DNA of 62,915 nt, filler included, from Reticulomyxa filosa (lineage: Eukaryota; Protista; Foraminifera): assembly GCA_000512085.1 (NCBI GenBank). It is 18 parts of 18 records of this genome, joined end to end, with 100 filler letters (N's around TTAATTAATTAA, not from the genome) between each part and the next. Parts side by side here need not be neighbours in the genome. Positions count along the whole stretch, not along the records: positions 5,031 to 11,089 come from ASPP01011106.1; 17 more parts are not named here. One strand, given 5' to 3'. Of the stretch, positions 5,031-11,089 are shown one piece after another. How positions within the stretch are numbered: the stretch's first letter is position 1; every line of letters starts with the position of its first letter. The translations under genes and the position numbers were made by a program. The notes beneath the pieces are model-generated. The model was not told the origin of the DNA and searched no databases. It saw nothing but the letters and a program-made list of their open reading frames with translations.

Positions 5031-5650
5031 ACTATTTTGTATTTATTTCATCCGATCGCCCTGTCCTACTATCCCTTTCAAGTCAATAAATCTCAAGCGT
5101 TTTTGTATAACTGTTTTTACTTTGCCGCCTCTTTCTATCATTCCACTACACATTGCTTTTTTGTGCCACGACCTCTTTTTAGTGGAGGAAAATTATTGTC
5201 GTCATCTTTGTCATTATTTCTTTTTCTCGGTTTGCCGCCGATGTAGGTTTCATCCATCTCAACAATACCTTCTAAAAGCTCTGCTTGACTGCCTTCCATA
5301 GCATTTCTGATTCTCAACATCATTGACCAAACTGTTGGCTGTCTCATTCCTAAATCTCTTGCTATCTGTGAACTAGACACGCCTTTGCGAGCGTTGAGCA
5401 TCAACGACATAACAAAAAACCATTTTTGTAATTCGATATGAGTATGATGAAAAATTGTGCCAACCAGTACGCTGAAAGATTTTTTGCAACCCCAGCATTG
5501 CAAGCGTTCTTTATTTTCTTCTGTATGCTTGCAAACCTTATCAGAACCACAATAAACACACTTGATTTCACCATTCCATCTAACCTTTTCAAGATGGCCT
5601 AAACATTTCTTTTGTGTTGAAAACTTCTTGGTTATTTCTAAAATATTCAT
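5031..5650 (-). CDS. IS1595-family (ISXO2-like DDE) transposase, N-terminal half
   Basis: ORF 5138-5650. After a 1-nt frameshift near 5145 it continues GMIERGGKVKTVIQKRLRFIDLKGIV toward the contig end. Confidence 0.92.
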
Positions 5651-5689
5651 AGACTTTTTATTTATAATTTAGCAACTTGACGAGGCTAT

Positions 5690-5718
5690 ATTATAAAAGG
5701 GCTTAAAGTCATTGTCAA
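5690..5718 (-). promoter_or_regulatory. Perfect sigma70 consensus promoter for the transposase
   Basis: Minus strand reads TTGACA-ATGACTTTAAGCCCTTT (17 nt)-TATAAT, about 40 nt upstream of the transposase ATG and inside the IS end. Confidence 0.85.
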
Positions 5719-5739
5719 GCCTTAAAGTGTATAAATCCG

Positions 5740-6186
5740 TTTTAAATTGTTCTACAGTCAATTTTTGATTTGAAATTGCAGCTGTTATAGATCTACCAAC
5801 TTTAGCATTTATATTTGGCATTGTGCGTACAATAGTAAACCCTGGAAAATGCTTTGAAAAATAATCCAAATTTTTCCTGCAATAGGAGTGATTATCAATG
5901 TATCTTTAGAATGAGAATCCATTAATGATTTTGCGTAATGAGCGATAATGTCATTGATTATTTGAGGTTTAACCCCAAATAGGAGAACTTGAAACTTTCC
6001 CCCCAAAGGATAATCGCTTATAATCTTAACTCCATAAGTTGATTTTATAGAATCAATCCTACGGCTACCCTTTGGGAGTAAAACGGTTATTTCTTCTTTA
6101 AAGAATTTACCGCTCTTTAGGATTCCTGCAAGAATAGCTGTACTTAAATTACCACAGCCCACCAGCAGGATTTTATTCATCAGCAA
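5740..6186 (-). pseudogene. proC: Pyrroline-5-carboxylate reductase, 3'-truncated by the IS
   Basis: KILLVGCGNLSTAILAG Rossmann motif, LFGVKPQ, IITPIAG, then IVRTMPN after a homopolymer frameshift near 5870. Only about 150 codons precede the IS end, so the C-terminal dimerisation domain is missing. Confidence 0.88.
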
Positions 6187-6189
6187 AAA

Positions 6190-6582
6190 CTACTTTTTAG
6201 ATTTTTTTGCAGCTGATTTTTTAGCTGGAGCTTTCTTTGCAGCTGATTTTTTAGCTGGAGCTTTCTTTGCAGCTGATTTTTTAGCTGGAGCTTTCTTTTT
6301 CATCTTTTCCTCCGTTGATGATTTTTTTGATGAATTATATTCATCTGGTAAAATTTCTATGCCTAAGACTTTTTTGATTTCAATTAAATCTTGTTTTGCT
6401 TTCGAGGTAATTTTTCTTAAAACATCAAACTCATCTTTAGTAACAAAATTCATTTTTTTTACTAAAGCTTCAACATGATCTTTAACATAACTGCTTATTT
6501 CCCTCTTGATATTTGCTGCAGTAGCAAATGCAGAACTTGCGATTTTACTGATATCGTCAAAAAATTTATTGTCTTTATTCAT
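6190..6582 (-). CDS. Accessory factor UbiK/BMFP-family protein with lysine/alanine-rich (KKAPAKKSAA)3 tail
   Basis: NKFFDDISKIASSAF...MNFVTKDEFDVLR family motif. Located divergent from lgt and upstream of proC, as in many alphaproteobacteria. Confidence 0.8.
   Translation of the reverse strand: MNKDNKFFDDISKIASSAFATAANIKREISSYVKDHVEALVKKMNFVTKDEFDVLRKITSKAKQDLIEIKKVLGIEILPDEYNSSKKSSTEEKMKKKAPAKKSAAKKAPAKKSAAKKAPAKKSAAKKSKK
6206..6295. repeat. Three exact 30-bp tandem repeats encoding KKAPAKKSAA
   Basis: tttgcagctgattttttagctggagctttc x3. Confidence 0.95.
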
Positions 6583-6636
6583 AAAAATAATTTATAAAAC
6601 TTGCAGTTACATTTTTTATTTTACAATTTTAAAAAC

Positions 6637-7417
6637 ATGCTCGCAATATTTTTTCCACTTATAAATCCAATCGCAATTTCATTAGGACCAATAAAAATTT
6701 ATTGGTATTCACTCGCATATATATTCGGAATTTTACTCGGATTTTTATTATTAAATTTTCATATTAAGAAAACAAATTTCAACATCAAAAAAAATATTTT
6801 GGACGATATCATCATCTATGCTGTAATAGGTATTATCGCAGGGGGAGATTAGGTTATATTTTATTTTATGATCTAAATAATGTTATCAATTTTCCTCTCC
6901 GTGCAATTAAAATTTGGGAAGGTGGAATGTCATTCCATGGAGGTACTTTAGGTTTTATTTTTGCTACGTATCTTTATAGCAACAAAATAAAATAAATTAT
7001 TTTCACTAATGGATTTGATCGTATGTGTAATTCCAATTGGAATTTTTTCGGAAGAATTGCAAATTTTATTAATGGTGAATTGTATGGAAGAATTACTAAA
7101 GTAAATTGGGGAGTAATTTTTCCGAATGTAGGTGAAAGTCCTCGCCACCCTTCTCAGCTCTATGAAGCAGCTACTGAAGGATTATTTTTATTCATCATTC
7201 TCAATACATTATTATATTTTACAGAAATAAAAAATAAACCTGGCGCATTAGGTGGAAGTTTTTGATTCTATACTCAGTTTTAGAATTTTGACTGAAACTT
7301 TTCGCGAACCTGATAAACACTTAGGATTATTTTTTATTCATTCACCATGGGTCAAATCCTTACAGTTCCATTTCTACTATTCGGAATTTATTTTCTTTTT
7401 AGAAAAACTAAACTTAA
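6637..7417 (+). CDS. lgt: Prolipoprotein diacylglyceryl transferase (several 1-nt frameshifts, probably sequencing errors)
   Basis: [22 protein letters not shown](R)[52 protein letters not shown]. Frameshifts near 6845, ~7010-7020, ~7260 and ~7330, mostly in homopolymers. Confidence 0.95.
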
Positions 7418-7932
7418 TTAGAATTAATTTTTTTAGCAATTTTTTCAGAGCATGAAGCTGCTTGTTTAAGACTTGGTGCTACTAATTCATTACAACAATC
7501 TAACATTACTTGTGCATTAATTAATTGTACCTGTTTTGCAATGTTTAAAAAATTATCAGCCAATTGTTCATTTGCAATATTCATATCAACCAAATTTTTT
7601 GAGGATATTAAATTATTAGAATAATTTGCATAAGCATTCCAAATATCGCCCATAACTAAATTCACATTAGTAAATAAATTATTTAATATTTGAGTTGCGA
7701 ATTCATGATTTTGTGAAGCAAGTCCACAATTATTAATACATAATTTATTTACTTCCTCTAATTGAGAAATAATATTTTCTGCAGATTTATTATCGATAAT
7801 AAAATCATCCTGACCTAAGTTTTTTTTCTTAGCTTTTAGTTCAGTATCATTTTTACTTAAGTTGCTAGAGTAATCTCTCGCATCAATTCCATTACTCTTT
7901 TTATTTACTGATTTAATAATTTTCGCAATCAT
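7414..7932 (-). CDS. Putative phasin-family protein
   Basis: Helical C-terminal half (SSKNLVDMNIANEQLADNFL...NELVAPSLKQAASCSEKI) resembles the alphaproteobacterial phasin pattern. The ATG at 7932 is preferred over 7962, which lies inside the putative IS end. Confidence 0.5.
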   Translation of the reverse strand: MIAKIIKSVNKKSNGIDARDYSSNLSKNDTELKAKKKNLGQDDFIIDNKSAENIISQLEEVNKLCINNCGLASQNHEFATQILNNLFTNVNLVMGDIWNAYANYSNNLISSKNLVDMNIANEQLADNFLNIAKQVQLINAQVMLDCCNELVAPSLKQAASCSEKIAKKINSN

Positions 7933-7965
7933 CCCTTTACATGTTGCGGATTTAAAAAGCATCCA

Positions 7966-10887
7966 CTATGTTATTGCATTTAATAAAAATAAGTTGATTT
8001 TATTTTTAATTTTCTCTTCTTGAAGTTTTATTAATTGCTTTGAAGATTCAACAATTTTTCTTTCATTTTCAATTTGTTCTACGATTTTTTTTTTGGACTT
8101 CAATTGATAGTAACATTATTTTTATATTTTTTAATTCAGAAACAGAAACAATATTTTGAATTGCATACCTCTAATATCAAAGTTTATATTTGATATTATA
8201 TACCAATATAAATACTTAGGAAAAACTGATTGTGCAGGGGTTACTTTTAACAATGCTTGATTAATAATACCTTTTTCAAAATTATTATTTAGCAATAATA
8301 CTTTGCCTATAGTTCCAGAGCAACTCATTAAAATATCATTTTCTTGAACTGAAAACCTTATCATTTCTTTATATTTTGATTCTGTAATATAATAATTACC
8401 AATTTTGACATCATTTTTAATGCAATTAGATTGTTCATAAACTTTAAAGCCACTTTCAACAAAAATTTCTTTTTTCAAGCTTCCACCAAATGGACCTCTT
8501 ACAAGTTTTGTAATATCGCCTAAGTTCCTAATTTCACAACCCTCACGAACCTCAAAACTAGGATTCCAATTATCAATTATCTGCTTTGCACCATCAATTA
8601 CTTTTTGATAGCTATCTATCTCTTCAACTATTTTTTGTTGTTCTTCTAAAGGGGGGAGGGGGATTTTTATTTTTTTTATATTATCATTACTTAGATGTAA
8701 GATGTTTGCCCCTCTTGCATACTTTGCTAGTTCATTTTTTAATGTATAGTTAAAAACTAATGATAAATATTGCGGATTGATTTTATTTTGACTATGTATC
8801 CTGATAATATTAATATCGCTACCTATCACCACATCTTTTTTACATAAAGTTCTTGCTATTGCAATTCCATCTTCATCTGCGGTGTAGTAGCTGGTATTAA
8901 CACATCTCCATAATTAGACAAAATTTTGCCTTTTACATTAGTTGTGCTGTATACTTTATCTATAAATGGATTGTTGTATTTTGTATATAACTCTCCATAT
9001 AAAATACATTCATATATTCCATCATTTTCAACTTCTGTTTTAGACAAAGCATTTCCTTTTTTAAATTCTATATGTTTTATTTCTTCTAATTCTTGTAAAG
9101 AAAACTCTTGAAATGCAAAATTATCAATAACTTGTTCCTTATATTGATTAGCGAGTAAAACATACTTGTTATTTCTTACTTTATTCTTATAAAGCACATC
9201 AAAATTAATCCTCTTTAATCTTTCAATTTCATCAATATTTAAAGAAGCTTCAGATAATAAAACATCGATATCATTTTGTCCTTTTATTTTTGTTCGTGCT
9301 TTATTTAAGGCGTAGCCATCATTTTGCAAATCAAAATACCATATATGATTTTGTTTTTGTTTGGCTTCTTCTTAATAATTATAATGTCGCTTTTAACTCC
9401 AACATCAACAAAAGTTCTTTTTGGAAGTGATACAACATTTTCTAGGCTATATTTTTCAACTAAATCTCTTCTAAGTTGTGTATATGCTTTATTCCCATTA
9501 AATAAAATACCTTCTGGCACAATAATTCCAGCTCGTGCATTTTCATTTTGATTATTTAAAGCATCTAAACAATGCAAAACTCCACATATTTCTGCAGACT
9601 TTCCGTTATACCCATATTGAGATAGATAATCTGTTTTCATTTTGTTTCCAAATGGAATATTTGTAATTACAACATCCAATTTATTGGTTTGCTTTTTCTC
9701 ATAACTATCTTGTCTTGCAATATTTGAGTGCCCGTCTCCCGCTAAAATCATATTCATTTTTGCAATTCTAAATATTGTTGAAAATTCACCGCCAAAAACA
9801 GTTTCATTTTTTAAATATCTTATTGTATTTGGATTTAATGGCATTCTTCTTTTTATATATTTAAAAGATTCGGTCAACATTCCACCAGTTCCACAAAAAC
9901 CATCATATATTTTTTCGCCAAACTTAGGATTTAATAATTTCACCATTGTTTTTACAATATGCCGTGGCGTAAAATATTCTCCAAAGTCAGTTTCTGCCCC
10001 ACCATAATTTCTTAAAAAATACTCAAAGGCATCCCCTTTAATATCTGTATTTGTATCAGACAGCCATAAATCATCTAAATTTGTAATAATGTCATTTAAG
10101 ATACGCTCTTTGCCGCTTAAAATTTCTATTTTTGATAAAACTTTACCGCCATAAGATTTCTTAAAATAATCAAATGCCTGTTTATTTAAAAAATCTACTA
10201 AATCAAGCCCTTTTTTAATTTTAAAATTGTCCCATAAATAATCTTTCGGGGGCAAAGCTATAGTACAGTCGTTCATTTCTGCAAGTTCACTAATAACCTT
10301 AAGGAATAAGATATTTGAAAATAAGTCTATTCTATCAAGACCACTTCTAATTCCCATTTTTCTAAAATCGTTATTAACAGTTTTGAATATAGATATTAAT
10401 TCCTCTCTTGATTGTAAAACCTTTTTGTCTATTGAGTCGTATTTTGTCTATTGAGTCGTAGATATTATCTTGTAAGAAATTAAGAAGAGTTGATTGATTC
10501 AATAAATCATCAACCTCTTCATTATTTAAAGTTAAATTTGCTTGTTTTTTTATATGATATGTTTTTGTATATATGCCATCCGTTGCAAAAACAACCGGAG
10601 CATTTAATATCTTTGCATATTCTATCCCTTGTTGCTGTGCTTTATTTATATCTTCATAGGGTTTTTTTGCTTCTATTATAGCAATGGGCTCATCAGAATT
10701 ATCTTTATACAAAATATAATCTGGACGCTTTCCACCTAATAACTTTTTTTTGTTTCTCTGTTTTAGGTCTTTGTTTATACACATTGCAAGAATTTATATC
10801 TTTACTATCATCATTCCATTTTAAATATCTTAATTCATTATCTATTGCAGCCTCAATATCTCTCTCAACTAAATCAGAATATTTCAT
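7966..10887 (-). CDS. Single-chain restriction-modification-specificity protein (HsdR_N-type nuclease + N6-adenine MTase + two TRDs; Type IIB/IIG-like), frameshifted
   Basis: RPDYILY...IIEAKK PD-(D/E)XK nuclease. GEYFTPRHIV, DGFCGTGG (motif I), NIPF (motif IV) and GIIVPEGILF methylase motifs. Two HsdS-like TRD/helix units (IPLPPLEEQQKIVEEI; LLSIEVQKKIVEQIENE). ORF pieces join into about 970 codons after correcting frameshifts near 10748, 10423-10460 (19-bp duplication), ~9350, ~8883 and ~8167. Confidence 0.88.
10423..10460. repeat. Exact 19-bp tandem duplication that frameshifts the R-M-S gene
   Basis: ttttgtctattgagtcgta x2. Deleting one copy gives DNIYDSIDKKVLQSREELISIFKTVNNDFRKMGIRSG, in frame with the methylase ORF. 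Confidence 0.95.
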
Positions 10888-11089
10888 AAAACCGCCTGCT
10901 TTACCAATAGATTAAGCATACAATCCATATCCTTGTTATTATACCTAAAAGCGAACTCATTAACATACTTTTGAAGATGTTTAGTTGATACGTGGTGATA
11001 AATACCAAGTATTCCACGCTTTAGAGTTCCCCAAAAATTCTCCATATTGTTGGTGTGAATGTTACCGCTAGCGACATACTCTTTCGTAT
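10884..11089 (-). CDS. IS1595-family transposase, C-terminal part (5' end off contig; not in the ORF track)
   Basis: Manual translation: TKEYVASGNIHTNNMENFWGTLKRGILGIYHHVSTKHLQKYVNEFAFRYNNKDMDCMLNLLVKQAVL*, the canonical IS1595 C-terminal signature. Confidence 0.93.

What the first reader, a model, noticed from the sequence alone, without database searches (positions are those of the whole stretch)
7947..11089. IS1595-family transporter element carrying a single-chain R-M-S restriction system as a translationally coupled passenger
Seen: the IS1595 transposase C-terminus ends in a TGA that overlaps the ATG of a ~970-codon nuclease-methylase-two-TRD fusion (ATGA at 10884-10887). The passenger stops at 7966. 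CGGATTTA lies at 7947-7954, the inverse of the IS left end at 5739. Established: IS1595-family members, notably the ISNha5 group with CGGnnTT ends, can carry passenger genes, and fused R-M-S chains with two TRDs are the HaeIV/AloI-like Type IIB layout. Inference: this is a compact self-mobile restriction cassette, expressed with the transposase, in an apparent protist-associated alphaproteobacterium. It could act as defence, addiction module or mobile epigenetic writer. I cannot establish novelty without searches.
Basis: partly seen in the sequence, partly recalled or inferred. Interest (0 to 1): 0.8.

Follow-up and report, generated by a model that had tools for sequence, protein, structure and literature searches.

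The report
Transposon carrying a dead restriction enzyme gene

Summary
The sequence features are real. An IS1595-type transposase C-terminus ends in a TGA that overlaps the ATG (10887-10884, minus strand) of a nuclease + N6-adenine methylase + two-TRD gene running to 7966. That gene is not an open frame. Six indels, one a 19-bp tandem duplication, split it into seven pieces.

A 92%-identical copy in a freshwater metagenome scaffold (L001) has an intact 304-aa transposase plus the same gene, bracketed by inverted repeats beginning CGCAATCATCCCTTGA. The window carries that right repeat at 7924-7939. The CGGATTTA at 7947-7954 is not an end. It matches a second, different IS1595-family element (5739 downward), whose complete copies have 24-nt perfect repeats.

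Sister elements with the same ends and 8-bp target duplications carry other cargo in the same slot after the transposase stop. At least 10 of these are identical 1665-bp copies in Candidatus Megaira polyxenophila. Related elements in other phyla carry different single-chain restriction enzymes.

The piece is the whole contig ASPP01011106.1 of the Reticulomyxa filosa assembly, most likely from its Rickettsiales symbiont. Verdict: a new, decayed member of a known kind, moderately interesting.

The parts
10887..11089 (-). C-terminal 67 codons of the IS1595-family transposase; the upstream part is lost at the contig end
   Evidence: Pfam DDE_Tnp_IS1595 E 4e-16. It is 94% aa identical to the intact 304-aa transposase of L001. 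The piece is the whole contig ASPP01011106.1.
10884..10887 (-). ATGA overlap of the transposase stop (TGA) and the cargo start (ATG)
   Evidence: Sequence. This ATG aligns with the native start of intact homologues P0122, P0121, P0123 and P0124. L001 has ATAA here. Sister elements have GTGA, TAAATG or similarly tight junctions.
7966..10887 (-). Single-chain R-M-S gene (nuclease, methylase, two TRDs), a pseudogene in seven frame pieces
   Evidence: Frame map, Pfam, PADLOC Type I MTase and specificity models, indels against L001.
10665..10724 (-). PD...EAK nuclease motif (P-D at 10724-10719, E-A-K at 10673-10665) inside the HSDR_N match
   Evidence: Translation. Pfam HSDR_N / HSDR_N_2 E 3e-7 / 8e-7.
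9350..10048 (-). N6-adenine methyltransferase domain (HsdM-like)
   Evidence: Pfam N6_Mtase E 1.1e-46. PADLOC MTase_I E 2e-64. 72-73% identical to intact P0121 and P0122.
8134..9330 (-). Specificity region with two target recognition domains and their conserved spacers; it continues to 7969 after two more frame shifts
   Evidence: Pfam Methylase_S, two stretches, E 1.3e-19. NCBIfam S-subunit models. Intact relatives of ~916-964 aa have two TRDs.
10423..10460 (-). 19-bp tandem duplication that shifts the frame
   Evidence: Absent from L001 and from related contigs of three metagenome studies (table 4).
7943..7978 (-).
   Evidence: Homology to L001 stops at 7979 and resumes in the inverted repeat. 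Only 8 nt match the other IS end, whereas complete copies of that IS have 24-nt repeats.
7924..7942 (-). Right terminal inverted repeat of the element; 7924 is the outermost base
   Evidence: The + strand reads CGCAATCATCCCTTTA from 7924. This equals the right repeat of L076-L081 and has one mismatch to L001, L002 and the Megaira copies.
7916..7923 (-). First 8 bases of flank (AAAATTAT on the minus strand): the expected right copy of the target duplication
   Evidence: The left copy cannot be seen because the contig ends inside the transposase.
5046..5739 (-). Second, different IS1595-family element: left end CGGATTTATACACTTTAAGG, transposase N-terminus with one frame shift, inserted into proC. 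Not part of the cargo element.
   Evidence: Pfam Zn_ribbon_IS1595 and DDE_Tnp_IS1595. 43% identity to the L001 transposase. 81% nt identity to a complete 3233-bp element in L085.

Best explanation
Window 11089-7924 (minus strand) is the right ~3.17 kb of a ~3.95-kb IS1595-family transporter IS. The layout is left inverted repeat, transposase (304 aa), single-chain R-M-S gene, right inverted repeat.

Shown:
- The unit is bounded by inverted repeats that begin CGCAATCATCCCTTGA.
- Sister elements with the same repeats insert with 8-bp duplications of AT-rich targets.
- The space between the transposase stop and the right repeat is a cargo slot that holds different genes in different copies.

Inferred for the intact ancestor:
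- The DDE transposase binds the repeats and moves the whole unit.
- The cargo is co-transcribed with the transposase gene and translated by coupling at the ATGA overlap.
- The cargo protein reads a bipartite site through two TRDs, methylates adenine there, and cuts unmodified DNA with its N-terminal PD-(D/E)xK nuclease, as Type IIB enzymes do. This would give defence and possibly addiction.

In this copy the R-M-S gene is dead: six frame-breaking indels and a replaced 3' end. The copy in L001 died independently. The host is most likely the Rickettsiales symbiont of Reticulomyxa filosa.
For: - L001 is 92% identical over 11089-7979. It has repeats at 197 and 4147 around the transposase and R-M-S gene.
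- The window has the right repeat at 7924-7939.
- The same repeats with 8-bp duplications occur in L005, L010, L074/75 and L077-81.
- At least 10 identical 1665-bp copies occur in Candidatus Megaira polyxenophila.
- Homology between the Megaira IS and L001 (88% nt) runs from the left repeat to the transposase stop, breaks there, and resumes at the right repeat.
- Metagenome contigs also diverge exactly at 10886.
- A sister clade with ends GGCAATTAT... carries other single-chain RM genes with 8-bp duplications: L006, L007 and L011.
- The cargo ATG aligns with the native start of intact homologues.
- Breaks in the window and in L001 sit at different places.
- Four window breaks are absent from related contigs of three studies.
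- Source contig. A Rickettsiales bacterium sequenced together with R. filosa is reported in PMC10847448.
Against: - The left end and the target duplication of the window's own copy cannot be seen, because the contig ends inside the transposase.
- L001 shows no target duplication.
- Five of the six window indels change a homopolymer run by one base and could be sequencing errors. No public run holds the window, so this could not be checked.
- No transposition, methylation or cleavage has been observed.
- Co-transcription rests only on the absence of a spacer. The promoter scan found no more sites than chance and no terminator.
Confidence: 0.82

Rival explanations
1. Chance adjacency. An ordinary IS1595 element, ending at its transposase stop, inserted just upstream of a resident chromosomal R-M-S gene, so the two are not one mobile unit.
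For: The closest intact R-M-S homologues (P0121 and P0122, 72-73% identical in the methylase part) sit in loci without any transposase (L082, L083). The gene family therefore also exists as a plain chromosomal gene.
Against: There is no repeat between the transposase stop and the cargo. The repeats lie outside both genes in L001, and the window has the same right repeat after the cargo. The flanks of L001 and the window differ. No close relative of this IS ends at the transposase stop.
Confidence: 0.04
2. The element is an ISNha5-type IS with CGGnnTT ends, whose right end is the CGGATTTA at 7947-7954.
For: The 8-mer lies 12 bases past the stop codon. The chance of it falling within a 60-nt zone is about 0.001. 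The window differs from L001 exactly in the 36 bases that contain it. A remnant of an end of the second IS, left by insertion and deletion, is therefore not excluded.
Against: The IS that owns this end has a different transposase (43% identity). Its complete copy has 24-nt perfect repeats, and beyond the 8-mer the window matches at about chance level. The end proper to this transposase lineage sits at 7924-7939.
Confidence: 0.05
3. The R-M-S gene is intact and working in the living symbiont, and the frame breaks are errors of the draft assembly.
For: Five of the six indels are one-base changes in runs of A or G. Neighbouring genes are broken at a similar or higher density: lgt has at least five frame changes in 0.8 kb, and proC and the second transposase one each. 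Related metagenome contigs lack four of the breaks.
Against: A 19-bp tandem duplication is not a typical homopolymer error. The 3' end of the gene is replaced. The independent copy L001, from another data set, is also dead, with three stops, two frame shifts and a lost start. Decay of this cargo therefore does occur.
Confidence: 0.12

Closest known systems
Transposon-like RM unit of Neisseria gonorrhoeae NCCP11945 (Furuta, Abe and Kobayashi 2010, PMC2853133, Fig. 11b)
   Same: A compact unit with terminal inverted repeats (26/26) and an 8-bp target duplication. It holds a gene with a transposase motif (COG3677) together with a Type IIG RM homologue and an S-subunit homologue.
   Different: There R-M and S are separate genes, the RM gene is truncated, and the authors left open which gene moved the unit. 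Here R, M and S are one reading frame that starts on the transposase stop codon, and many sister copies define the ends and the cargo slot.
IS1595-family transporter IS with passenger genes (Siguier, Gagnevin and Chandler 2009; ISfinder groups ISNwi1+, ISPna2+, ISNha5). Recalled from memory; the paper is not in the library.
   Same: Zn-ribbon + DDE transposase, short terminal repeats, 8-bp duplications, and passenger genes inside the repeats, at sizes of 1.6-4.9 kb.
   Different: The ends CGCAATCAT... fit neither the recalled ISNha5 pattern (CGGnnTT) nor exactly the ISNwi1 pattern (ggnnatTAT). The sister clade GGCAATTAT... does fit the latter. I could not check ISfinder for named entries with RM cargo.
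The 1665-bp IS of Candidatus Megaira polyxenophila (AP017964/AP017966; transposase P0277)
   Same: Same terminal repeats, 88% nt identity from the left repeat to the transposase stop, and a Rickettsiales host.
   Different: Its cargo slot holds an antisense 213-aa ORF of unknown function instead of the R-M-S gene, and it is present in at least 10 identical, apparently active copies.
Single-chain Type IIB restriction enzymes (AloI, PpiI, TstI, CjeI, HaeIV). Architecture recalled from memory.
   Same: The order N-terminal PD-(D/E)xK nuclease, gamma-type N6-adenine methylase, then two TRDs in one polypeptide of about 900-1000 aa.
   Different: No sequence comparison with these enzymes was possible (no REBASE). 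The domains score best against Type I HsdM, HsdS and the HsdR N-terminus. The recognition site and cutting pattern are unknown.

Membership tests
IS1595 family (insertion sequences) | Transposase with N-terminal zinc ribbon and ISXO2-like DDE domain | tested here: met
   Window C-terminus: PF12762 E 4e-16. Full-length L001 counterpart: NCBIfam transpos_IS1595 E 7e-61, with PF12760 + PF12762 in all close relatives.
IS1595 family (insertion sequences) | Short terminal inverted repeats at both ends | tested here: met
   The right repeat is seen in the window at 7924-7942. Both are seen in L001, L002, L074-81 and the Megaira copies. The window's left end is off the contig.
IS1595 family (insertion sequences) | 8-bp target site duplication | tested here: inconclusive
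   Met in sister copies L005, L010, L074/75 and L077-81, and in L006, L007 and L011. Absent in L001. Not observable for the window's copy.
   The ends of this element begin CGCAATC. The other IS in the window (5739) does begin CGGATTT.
Transporter IS (an IS with passenger genes) | Non-transposition gene(s) inside the terminal repeats, moving with the transposase | tested here: met
   The repeats bracket the transposase and R-M-S gene in L001. The same backbone carries at least five other cargoes, each with repeats and mostly with duplications.
Type IIB single-chain R-M-S enzymes | Nuclease, methylase and specificity domains in one polypeptide | tested here: met
   The domains lie in this order in the frame-corrected window gene and in intact relatives P0122 (916 aa) and P0124 (964 aa).
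Type IIB single-chain R-M-S enzymes | Two TRDs, implying a bipartite site | tested here: met
   Two Methylase_S stretches plus about 450 aa of specificity region. Two-stretch matches to S subunits in P0122 and P0124. Relatives of about 760 aa have one TRD.
Type IIB single-chain R-M-S enzymes | Cleavage on both sides of the site; AdoMet-dependent | not testable with these tools
   Needs the enzyme; this copy is broken.
Type I restriction-modification | Separate HsdR with an SF2 helicase/translocase motor | tested here: not met
   Only the N-terminal nuclease part of HsdR is present. No helicase domain was found in any piece or in intact relatives.

The most novel reading that the evidence does not exclude
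IS1595-family elements have a defined cargo slot that starts at the transposase stop codon and ends at the right repeat. Cassettes are exchanged there, and across phyla the slot is preferentially filled with one-protein or two-gene DNA-modification and defence modules. Cargo seen here: single-chain R-M-S and Type IIG enzymes, EcoRI-type methylase + GmrSD/HNH, methylase-HNH fusion, Dam-like methylase, and an AriA/OLD-like ATPase. These elements would then be the smallest autonomous vehicles of restriction systems, a class not yet surveyed. The window is one decayed example.
Probability: 0.45. Interest if true: 0.6.

Novelty: new member of a known kind. Interest (0 to 1): 0.42.

Why it matters
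Restriction-modification genes are thought to behave as selfish mobile units, but clear cases of a restriction system moving with its own transposase are few. This lineage gives a clean natural series: one IS backbone, precise ends, 8-bp duplications, and interchangeable cargo that includes a complete one-protein restriction system starting on the transposase stop codon.

Intact relatives (for example the elements in L006, L007 and L011) could be used to test three things: whether transposase and restriction enzyme are co-expressed, whether the unit transposes as a whole, and whether it stabilises itself by post-segregational killing.

For the window itself the message is ordinary. It is a decayed copy in an IS-ridden symbiont genome, mis-annotated as foraminiferal genes.

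Tried and rejected
- Exact-protein look-ups of two intact window ORFs found nothing. The source was found later through a longer gene model.
- The genome-contig scan did not contain the source genome.
- The metagenome-contig scan with the methylase piece gave only 27-53% relatives (one short 51-residue fragment at 67%), and only one (L061) had a transposase upstream.
- No public run holds the window (best share 0.14). The frame breaks could therefore be compared only with relatives' contigs, not with the source reads.
- No terminal repeats could be found for L003, and L013 keeps only a right repeat, so neither is counted as a proven unit.
- The promoter/terminator scan was uninformative: 20 sites against 21 expected.
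- The Atlas search on the 130-aa ORF gave no taxonomy.
- Paper searches for ISNwi1/ISNha5 and for IS1595 with defence cargo found no systematic description. The 2009 IS1595 family paper is not in the library.
- The IR pattern hit 19 IMG/VR contigs, mostly as single copies. Only L089/L090 and L101 hold real IS copies.
- Rejected: the 8-mer as an element end, and chance adjacency (see rivals).
- Not attempted: structure prediction, because the domains are unambiguous and no solved single-chain Type IIB structure turned up in the sequence search.
Full report
**What is in the piece**

All relevant genes lie on the minus strand. Reading 11089 downward:
- the last 67 codons of an IS1595/ISXO2-type DDE transposase (Pfam E 4e-16);
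- a 2.9-kb nuclease-methylase-specificity gene (10887-7966);
- a 182-codon ORF with no family match;
- a multiply frame-shifted lgt on the plus strand;
- a 130-codon BMFP/UbiK-like ORF;
- a proC cut off at 5740;
- the left end and N-terminal half of a second IS1595-type transposase (5739-5046).

The piece is the complete 6059-bp contig ASPP01011106.1 of the Reticulomyxa filosa assembly GCA_000512085.1. There it is annotated with eukaryote-style gene models. A Rickettsiales bacterium was sequenced together with this foraminifer (PMC10847448). Both contig ends fall inside transposase genes, as expected when repeats break an assembly (inference).

**Checking the observation**

The TGA of the transposase and an ATG overlap as ATGA at 10887-10884. 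That ATG aligns with the first residues of intact homologues, all starting M....ERD[IV]E. The cargo gene is therefore complete at its 5' end and begins on the transposase stop.

Pfam finds HSDR_N, N6_Mtase (1e-46) and two Methylase_S stretches. A P-D...E-A-K nuclease motif is present.

The gene is not open. It falls into seven frame pieces. Against the 92%-identical copy in L001 the causes are:
- one extra A at 10751;
- a 19-bp tandem duplication (10460-10423);
- single-base losses at 9353, 8884 and about 8157;
- one extra A at 8094;
- a 36-bp replaced stretch at the 3' end.

CGGATTTA is at 7947-7954 and, inverted, at 5732-5739.

**Where the element really ends**

L001 is a 4.5-kb scaffold binned with a Bacteroidota MAG from a stream metagenome. 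It matches window 11089-7979 at 92%. It carries an intact 304-aa transposase directly followed by the same gene. Transposase and cargo together are bracketed by inverted repeats starting CGCAATCATCCCTTGA at 197 and 4147, giving an element of 3951 bp.

The window has this repeat at 7924-7939, with 19 nt matching. It is identical to the right repeat of L076-81. The flanks of L001 and the window are unrelated.

The IS that starts at 5739 has a transposase only 43% identical to that of L001. It is a different family member. A complete relative of it (L085, 81% nt identity, 3233 bp) has 24-nt perfect repeats, CGGATTTATACACTTTAAGGTTGA.

At 7947 the window matches only the first 8 nt. Chance alone gives such a match in a 60-nt zone about once in a thousand. 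It also sits in the stretch that differs from L001. A scar of an old insertion therefore cannot be excluded, but it is not an end of the transposase + R-M-S unit.

**One backbone, many cargoes**

The word-index search found dozens of transposases 75-95% identical to that of L001. Their contigs show the same repeats around different cargo:

| Loci | Cargo after the transposase stop | Element size | Target duplication |
|---|---|---|---|
| L074/75 | antisense 148-aa ORF | 1614 bp | AAATTTAA |
| L076-81 | sense 148- and 97-aa ORFs, starting on a GTGA overlap | 1741 bp | TAAATTTA |
| L002 | antisense 179-aa ORF | 1561 bp | contig starts at the IS end |
| L005 | antisense 271-aa ORF | 2086 bp | AAAACAAA |
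| L010 | antisense 1025-aa Type IIG enzyme (PADLOC E 3.5e-183) | 4234 bp | ATTATTTT |

One cluster member is the transposase of Candidatus Megaira polyxenophila. At least 10 identical 1665-bp copies lie on its chromosome and plasmid, each with an antisense 213-aa ORF.

Homology between the Megaira IS and L001 (88% nt) runs from the left repeat to the transposase stop, breaks there, and resumes only in the right repeat. Contigs of related organisms in freshwater metagenomes also diverge from the window exactly at 10886.

None of these copies ends directly after the transposase.

**A wider pattern**

A more distant clade has about 42% transposase identity and ends GGCAATTATACGCTTGACAA. It occurs in Ignavibacteriota and Bacteroidota MAGs and carries three different single-chain RM genes directly after the transposase stop:

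| Locus | Element size | Cargo | Target duplication |
|---|---|---|---|
| L006 | 3487 bp | 761 aa | TAAAGCTA |
| L007 | 4869 bp | 1035 aa | TTAGTTAT |
| L011 | 3866 bp | 893 aa | TAAATTTA |

Other repeat-bounded relatives carry:
- an EcoRI-type methylase with a GmrSD/HNH nuclease (L021);
- a P63C protein with a methylase-HNH fusion (L028);
- a Dam-like methylase (L041);
- an AriA/OLD-like ATPase with an M78 peptidase (L085);
- one metabolic gene, prephenate dehydratase (L039).

This was not a designed census, so I draw no enrichment statistic from it.

**Origin and state of the cargo**

The exhaustive search found 203 cluster representatives at E below 1e-30. Most of the near-complete ones fall into two size classes, about 750 aa (one TRD) and about 950 aa (two TRDs).

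The closest intact proteins are P0122 (916 aa) and P0121 (761 aa), 72-73% identical in the methylase part. Both lie in ordinary gene neighbourhoods without a transposase. The cargo was therefore probably captured from a chromosomal gene pool (inference).

The domains resemble Type I HsdM, HsdS and the nuclease head of HsdR. No helicase domain is present, and no solved structure of a single-chain form was found.

The breaks in the window and in L001 are all at different places. L001 has ATA for ATG, three stops and two single-base deletions. Contigs from three separate metagenome studies lack four of the window's breaks. The common ancestor was thus intact, and each copy decayed on its own.

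Five window breaks are one-base changes in homopolymer runs. The neighbouring lgt, proC and second transposase are similarly broken. Draft-assembly error therefore cannot be ruled out for those. The 19-bp duplication and the replaced 3' end argue that the gene is nevertheless dead.

**How it most likely works (intact form)**

Shown: terminal repeats, 8-bp duplications in sister copies, the cargo slot, the stop/start overlap, and the domain order.

Inferred:
- The transposase recognises the repeats and moves the unit. The repeats contain a TTGAC motif that could serve as a -35 element reading inward from either end, which would explain both sense and antisense cargo.
- Sense cargo is co-transcribed and translationally coupled. 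There is no spacer, no terminator-like site and no promoter signal above chance.
- The protein methylates a bipartite site and cuts unmodified DNA.
- A one-protein system suits an IS. A single specificity module serves both activities, so no separate control of R and M is needed on arrival in a new cell.

**Comparison and verdict**

The kind is known. IS1595-family elements with passenger genes were described in 2009 (recalled from memory). A transposase-motif gene + Type IIG RM + S unit with 26-bp repeats and an 8-bp duplication was reported in Neisseria gonorrhoeae (PMC2853133).

New here are this particular member, the exact cargo slot, and the series of sister elements. I found no systematic account of RM cargo in this IS family in the searchable literature, but ISfinder and REBASE could not be consulted.

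The window itself holds a truncated, decayed copy. Interest is moderate.

Noticed in passing
window 5046-5739 (minus); L085 3881-7113: The second IS (ends CGGATTTATACACTTTAAGG) is inserted in proC. Its transposase has a frame shift near 5160. A complete relative in an IMG/VR contig is 3233 bp with 24-nt perfect repeats. That relative carries an AriA/OLD-like ATPase (443 aa, starting on the transposase stop), an M78 peptidase-like protein and a 123-aa ORF.
   Followed up: partly
window 6598-7418 (plus): lgt (prolipoprotein diacylglyceryl transferase) is readable only through at least five frame changes and one stop. Either this normally essential gene is decaying or the draft contig has many indel errors.
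   Followed up: partly
window 6193-6582 (minus); 6199-6298: A bacterial BMFP/UbiK-like ORF with a 30-nt tandem repeat encoding a Lys/Ala-rich tail. In the Reticulomyxa filosa record it is annotated as 'putative histone H1/H5 family protein' (P0271, a 199-aa gene model). The record also has a 978-aa spliced-style model laid over the broken R-M-S gene.
   Followed up: partly
window 7414-7962 (minus): The 182-codon ORF downstream of the element starts inside it. A shorter start (ATG at 7932) is supplied by the right inverted repeat itself (GGGATGATTGCG). No family match. It may be a host gene decapitated by the insertion.
   Followed up: no
L089 9534-11882 and L090 (IMG/VR contig 3300005989_000314): An intact 767-aa one-TRD R-M-S homologue (about 40% identical) ends next to a solitary copy of the same repeat (CGCAATCATCCCTTGACGTTCAAT), with no transposase detected beside it. 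The same contig also holds a full copy of the IS with other cargo.
   Followed up: partly
L108-L117 (Candidatus Megaira polyxenophila), 5884-6525 in each: Every copy of the 1665-bp Megaira IS carries an antisense 213-aa ORF that overlaps the transposase 3' end by 32 nt. It has no Pfam or PADLOC match. The antisense ORFs of L002 and L074 are 44% identical to each other but did not match the Megaira one.
   Followed up: partly
window 8037-8632 versus metagenome contigs: Related contigs replace or skip parts of the second TRD region (joints 8037/8626, 8523/8626, 8540/8632), while the methylase part stays about 93-95% identical. This suggests TRD swapping among copies.
   Followed up: no
L076-L081, L074: Contigs with close copies of this IS also encode TraD, TraU, Fic and ankyrin-repeat proteins, typical of Rickettsiales mobile regions. 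L001 is filed under a Bacteroidota MAG, but at 29% GC and 4.5 kb it may be mis-binned.
   Followed up: no
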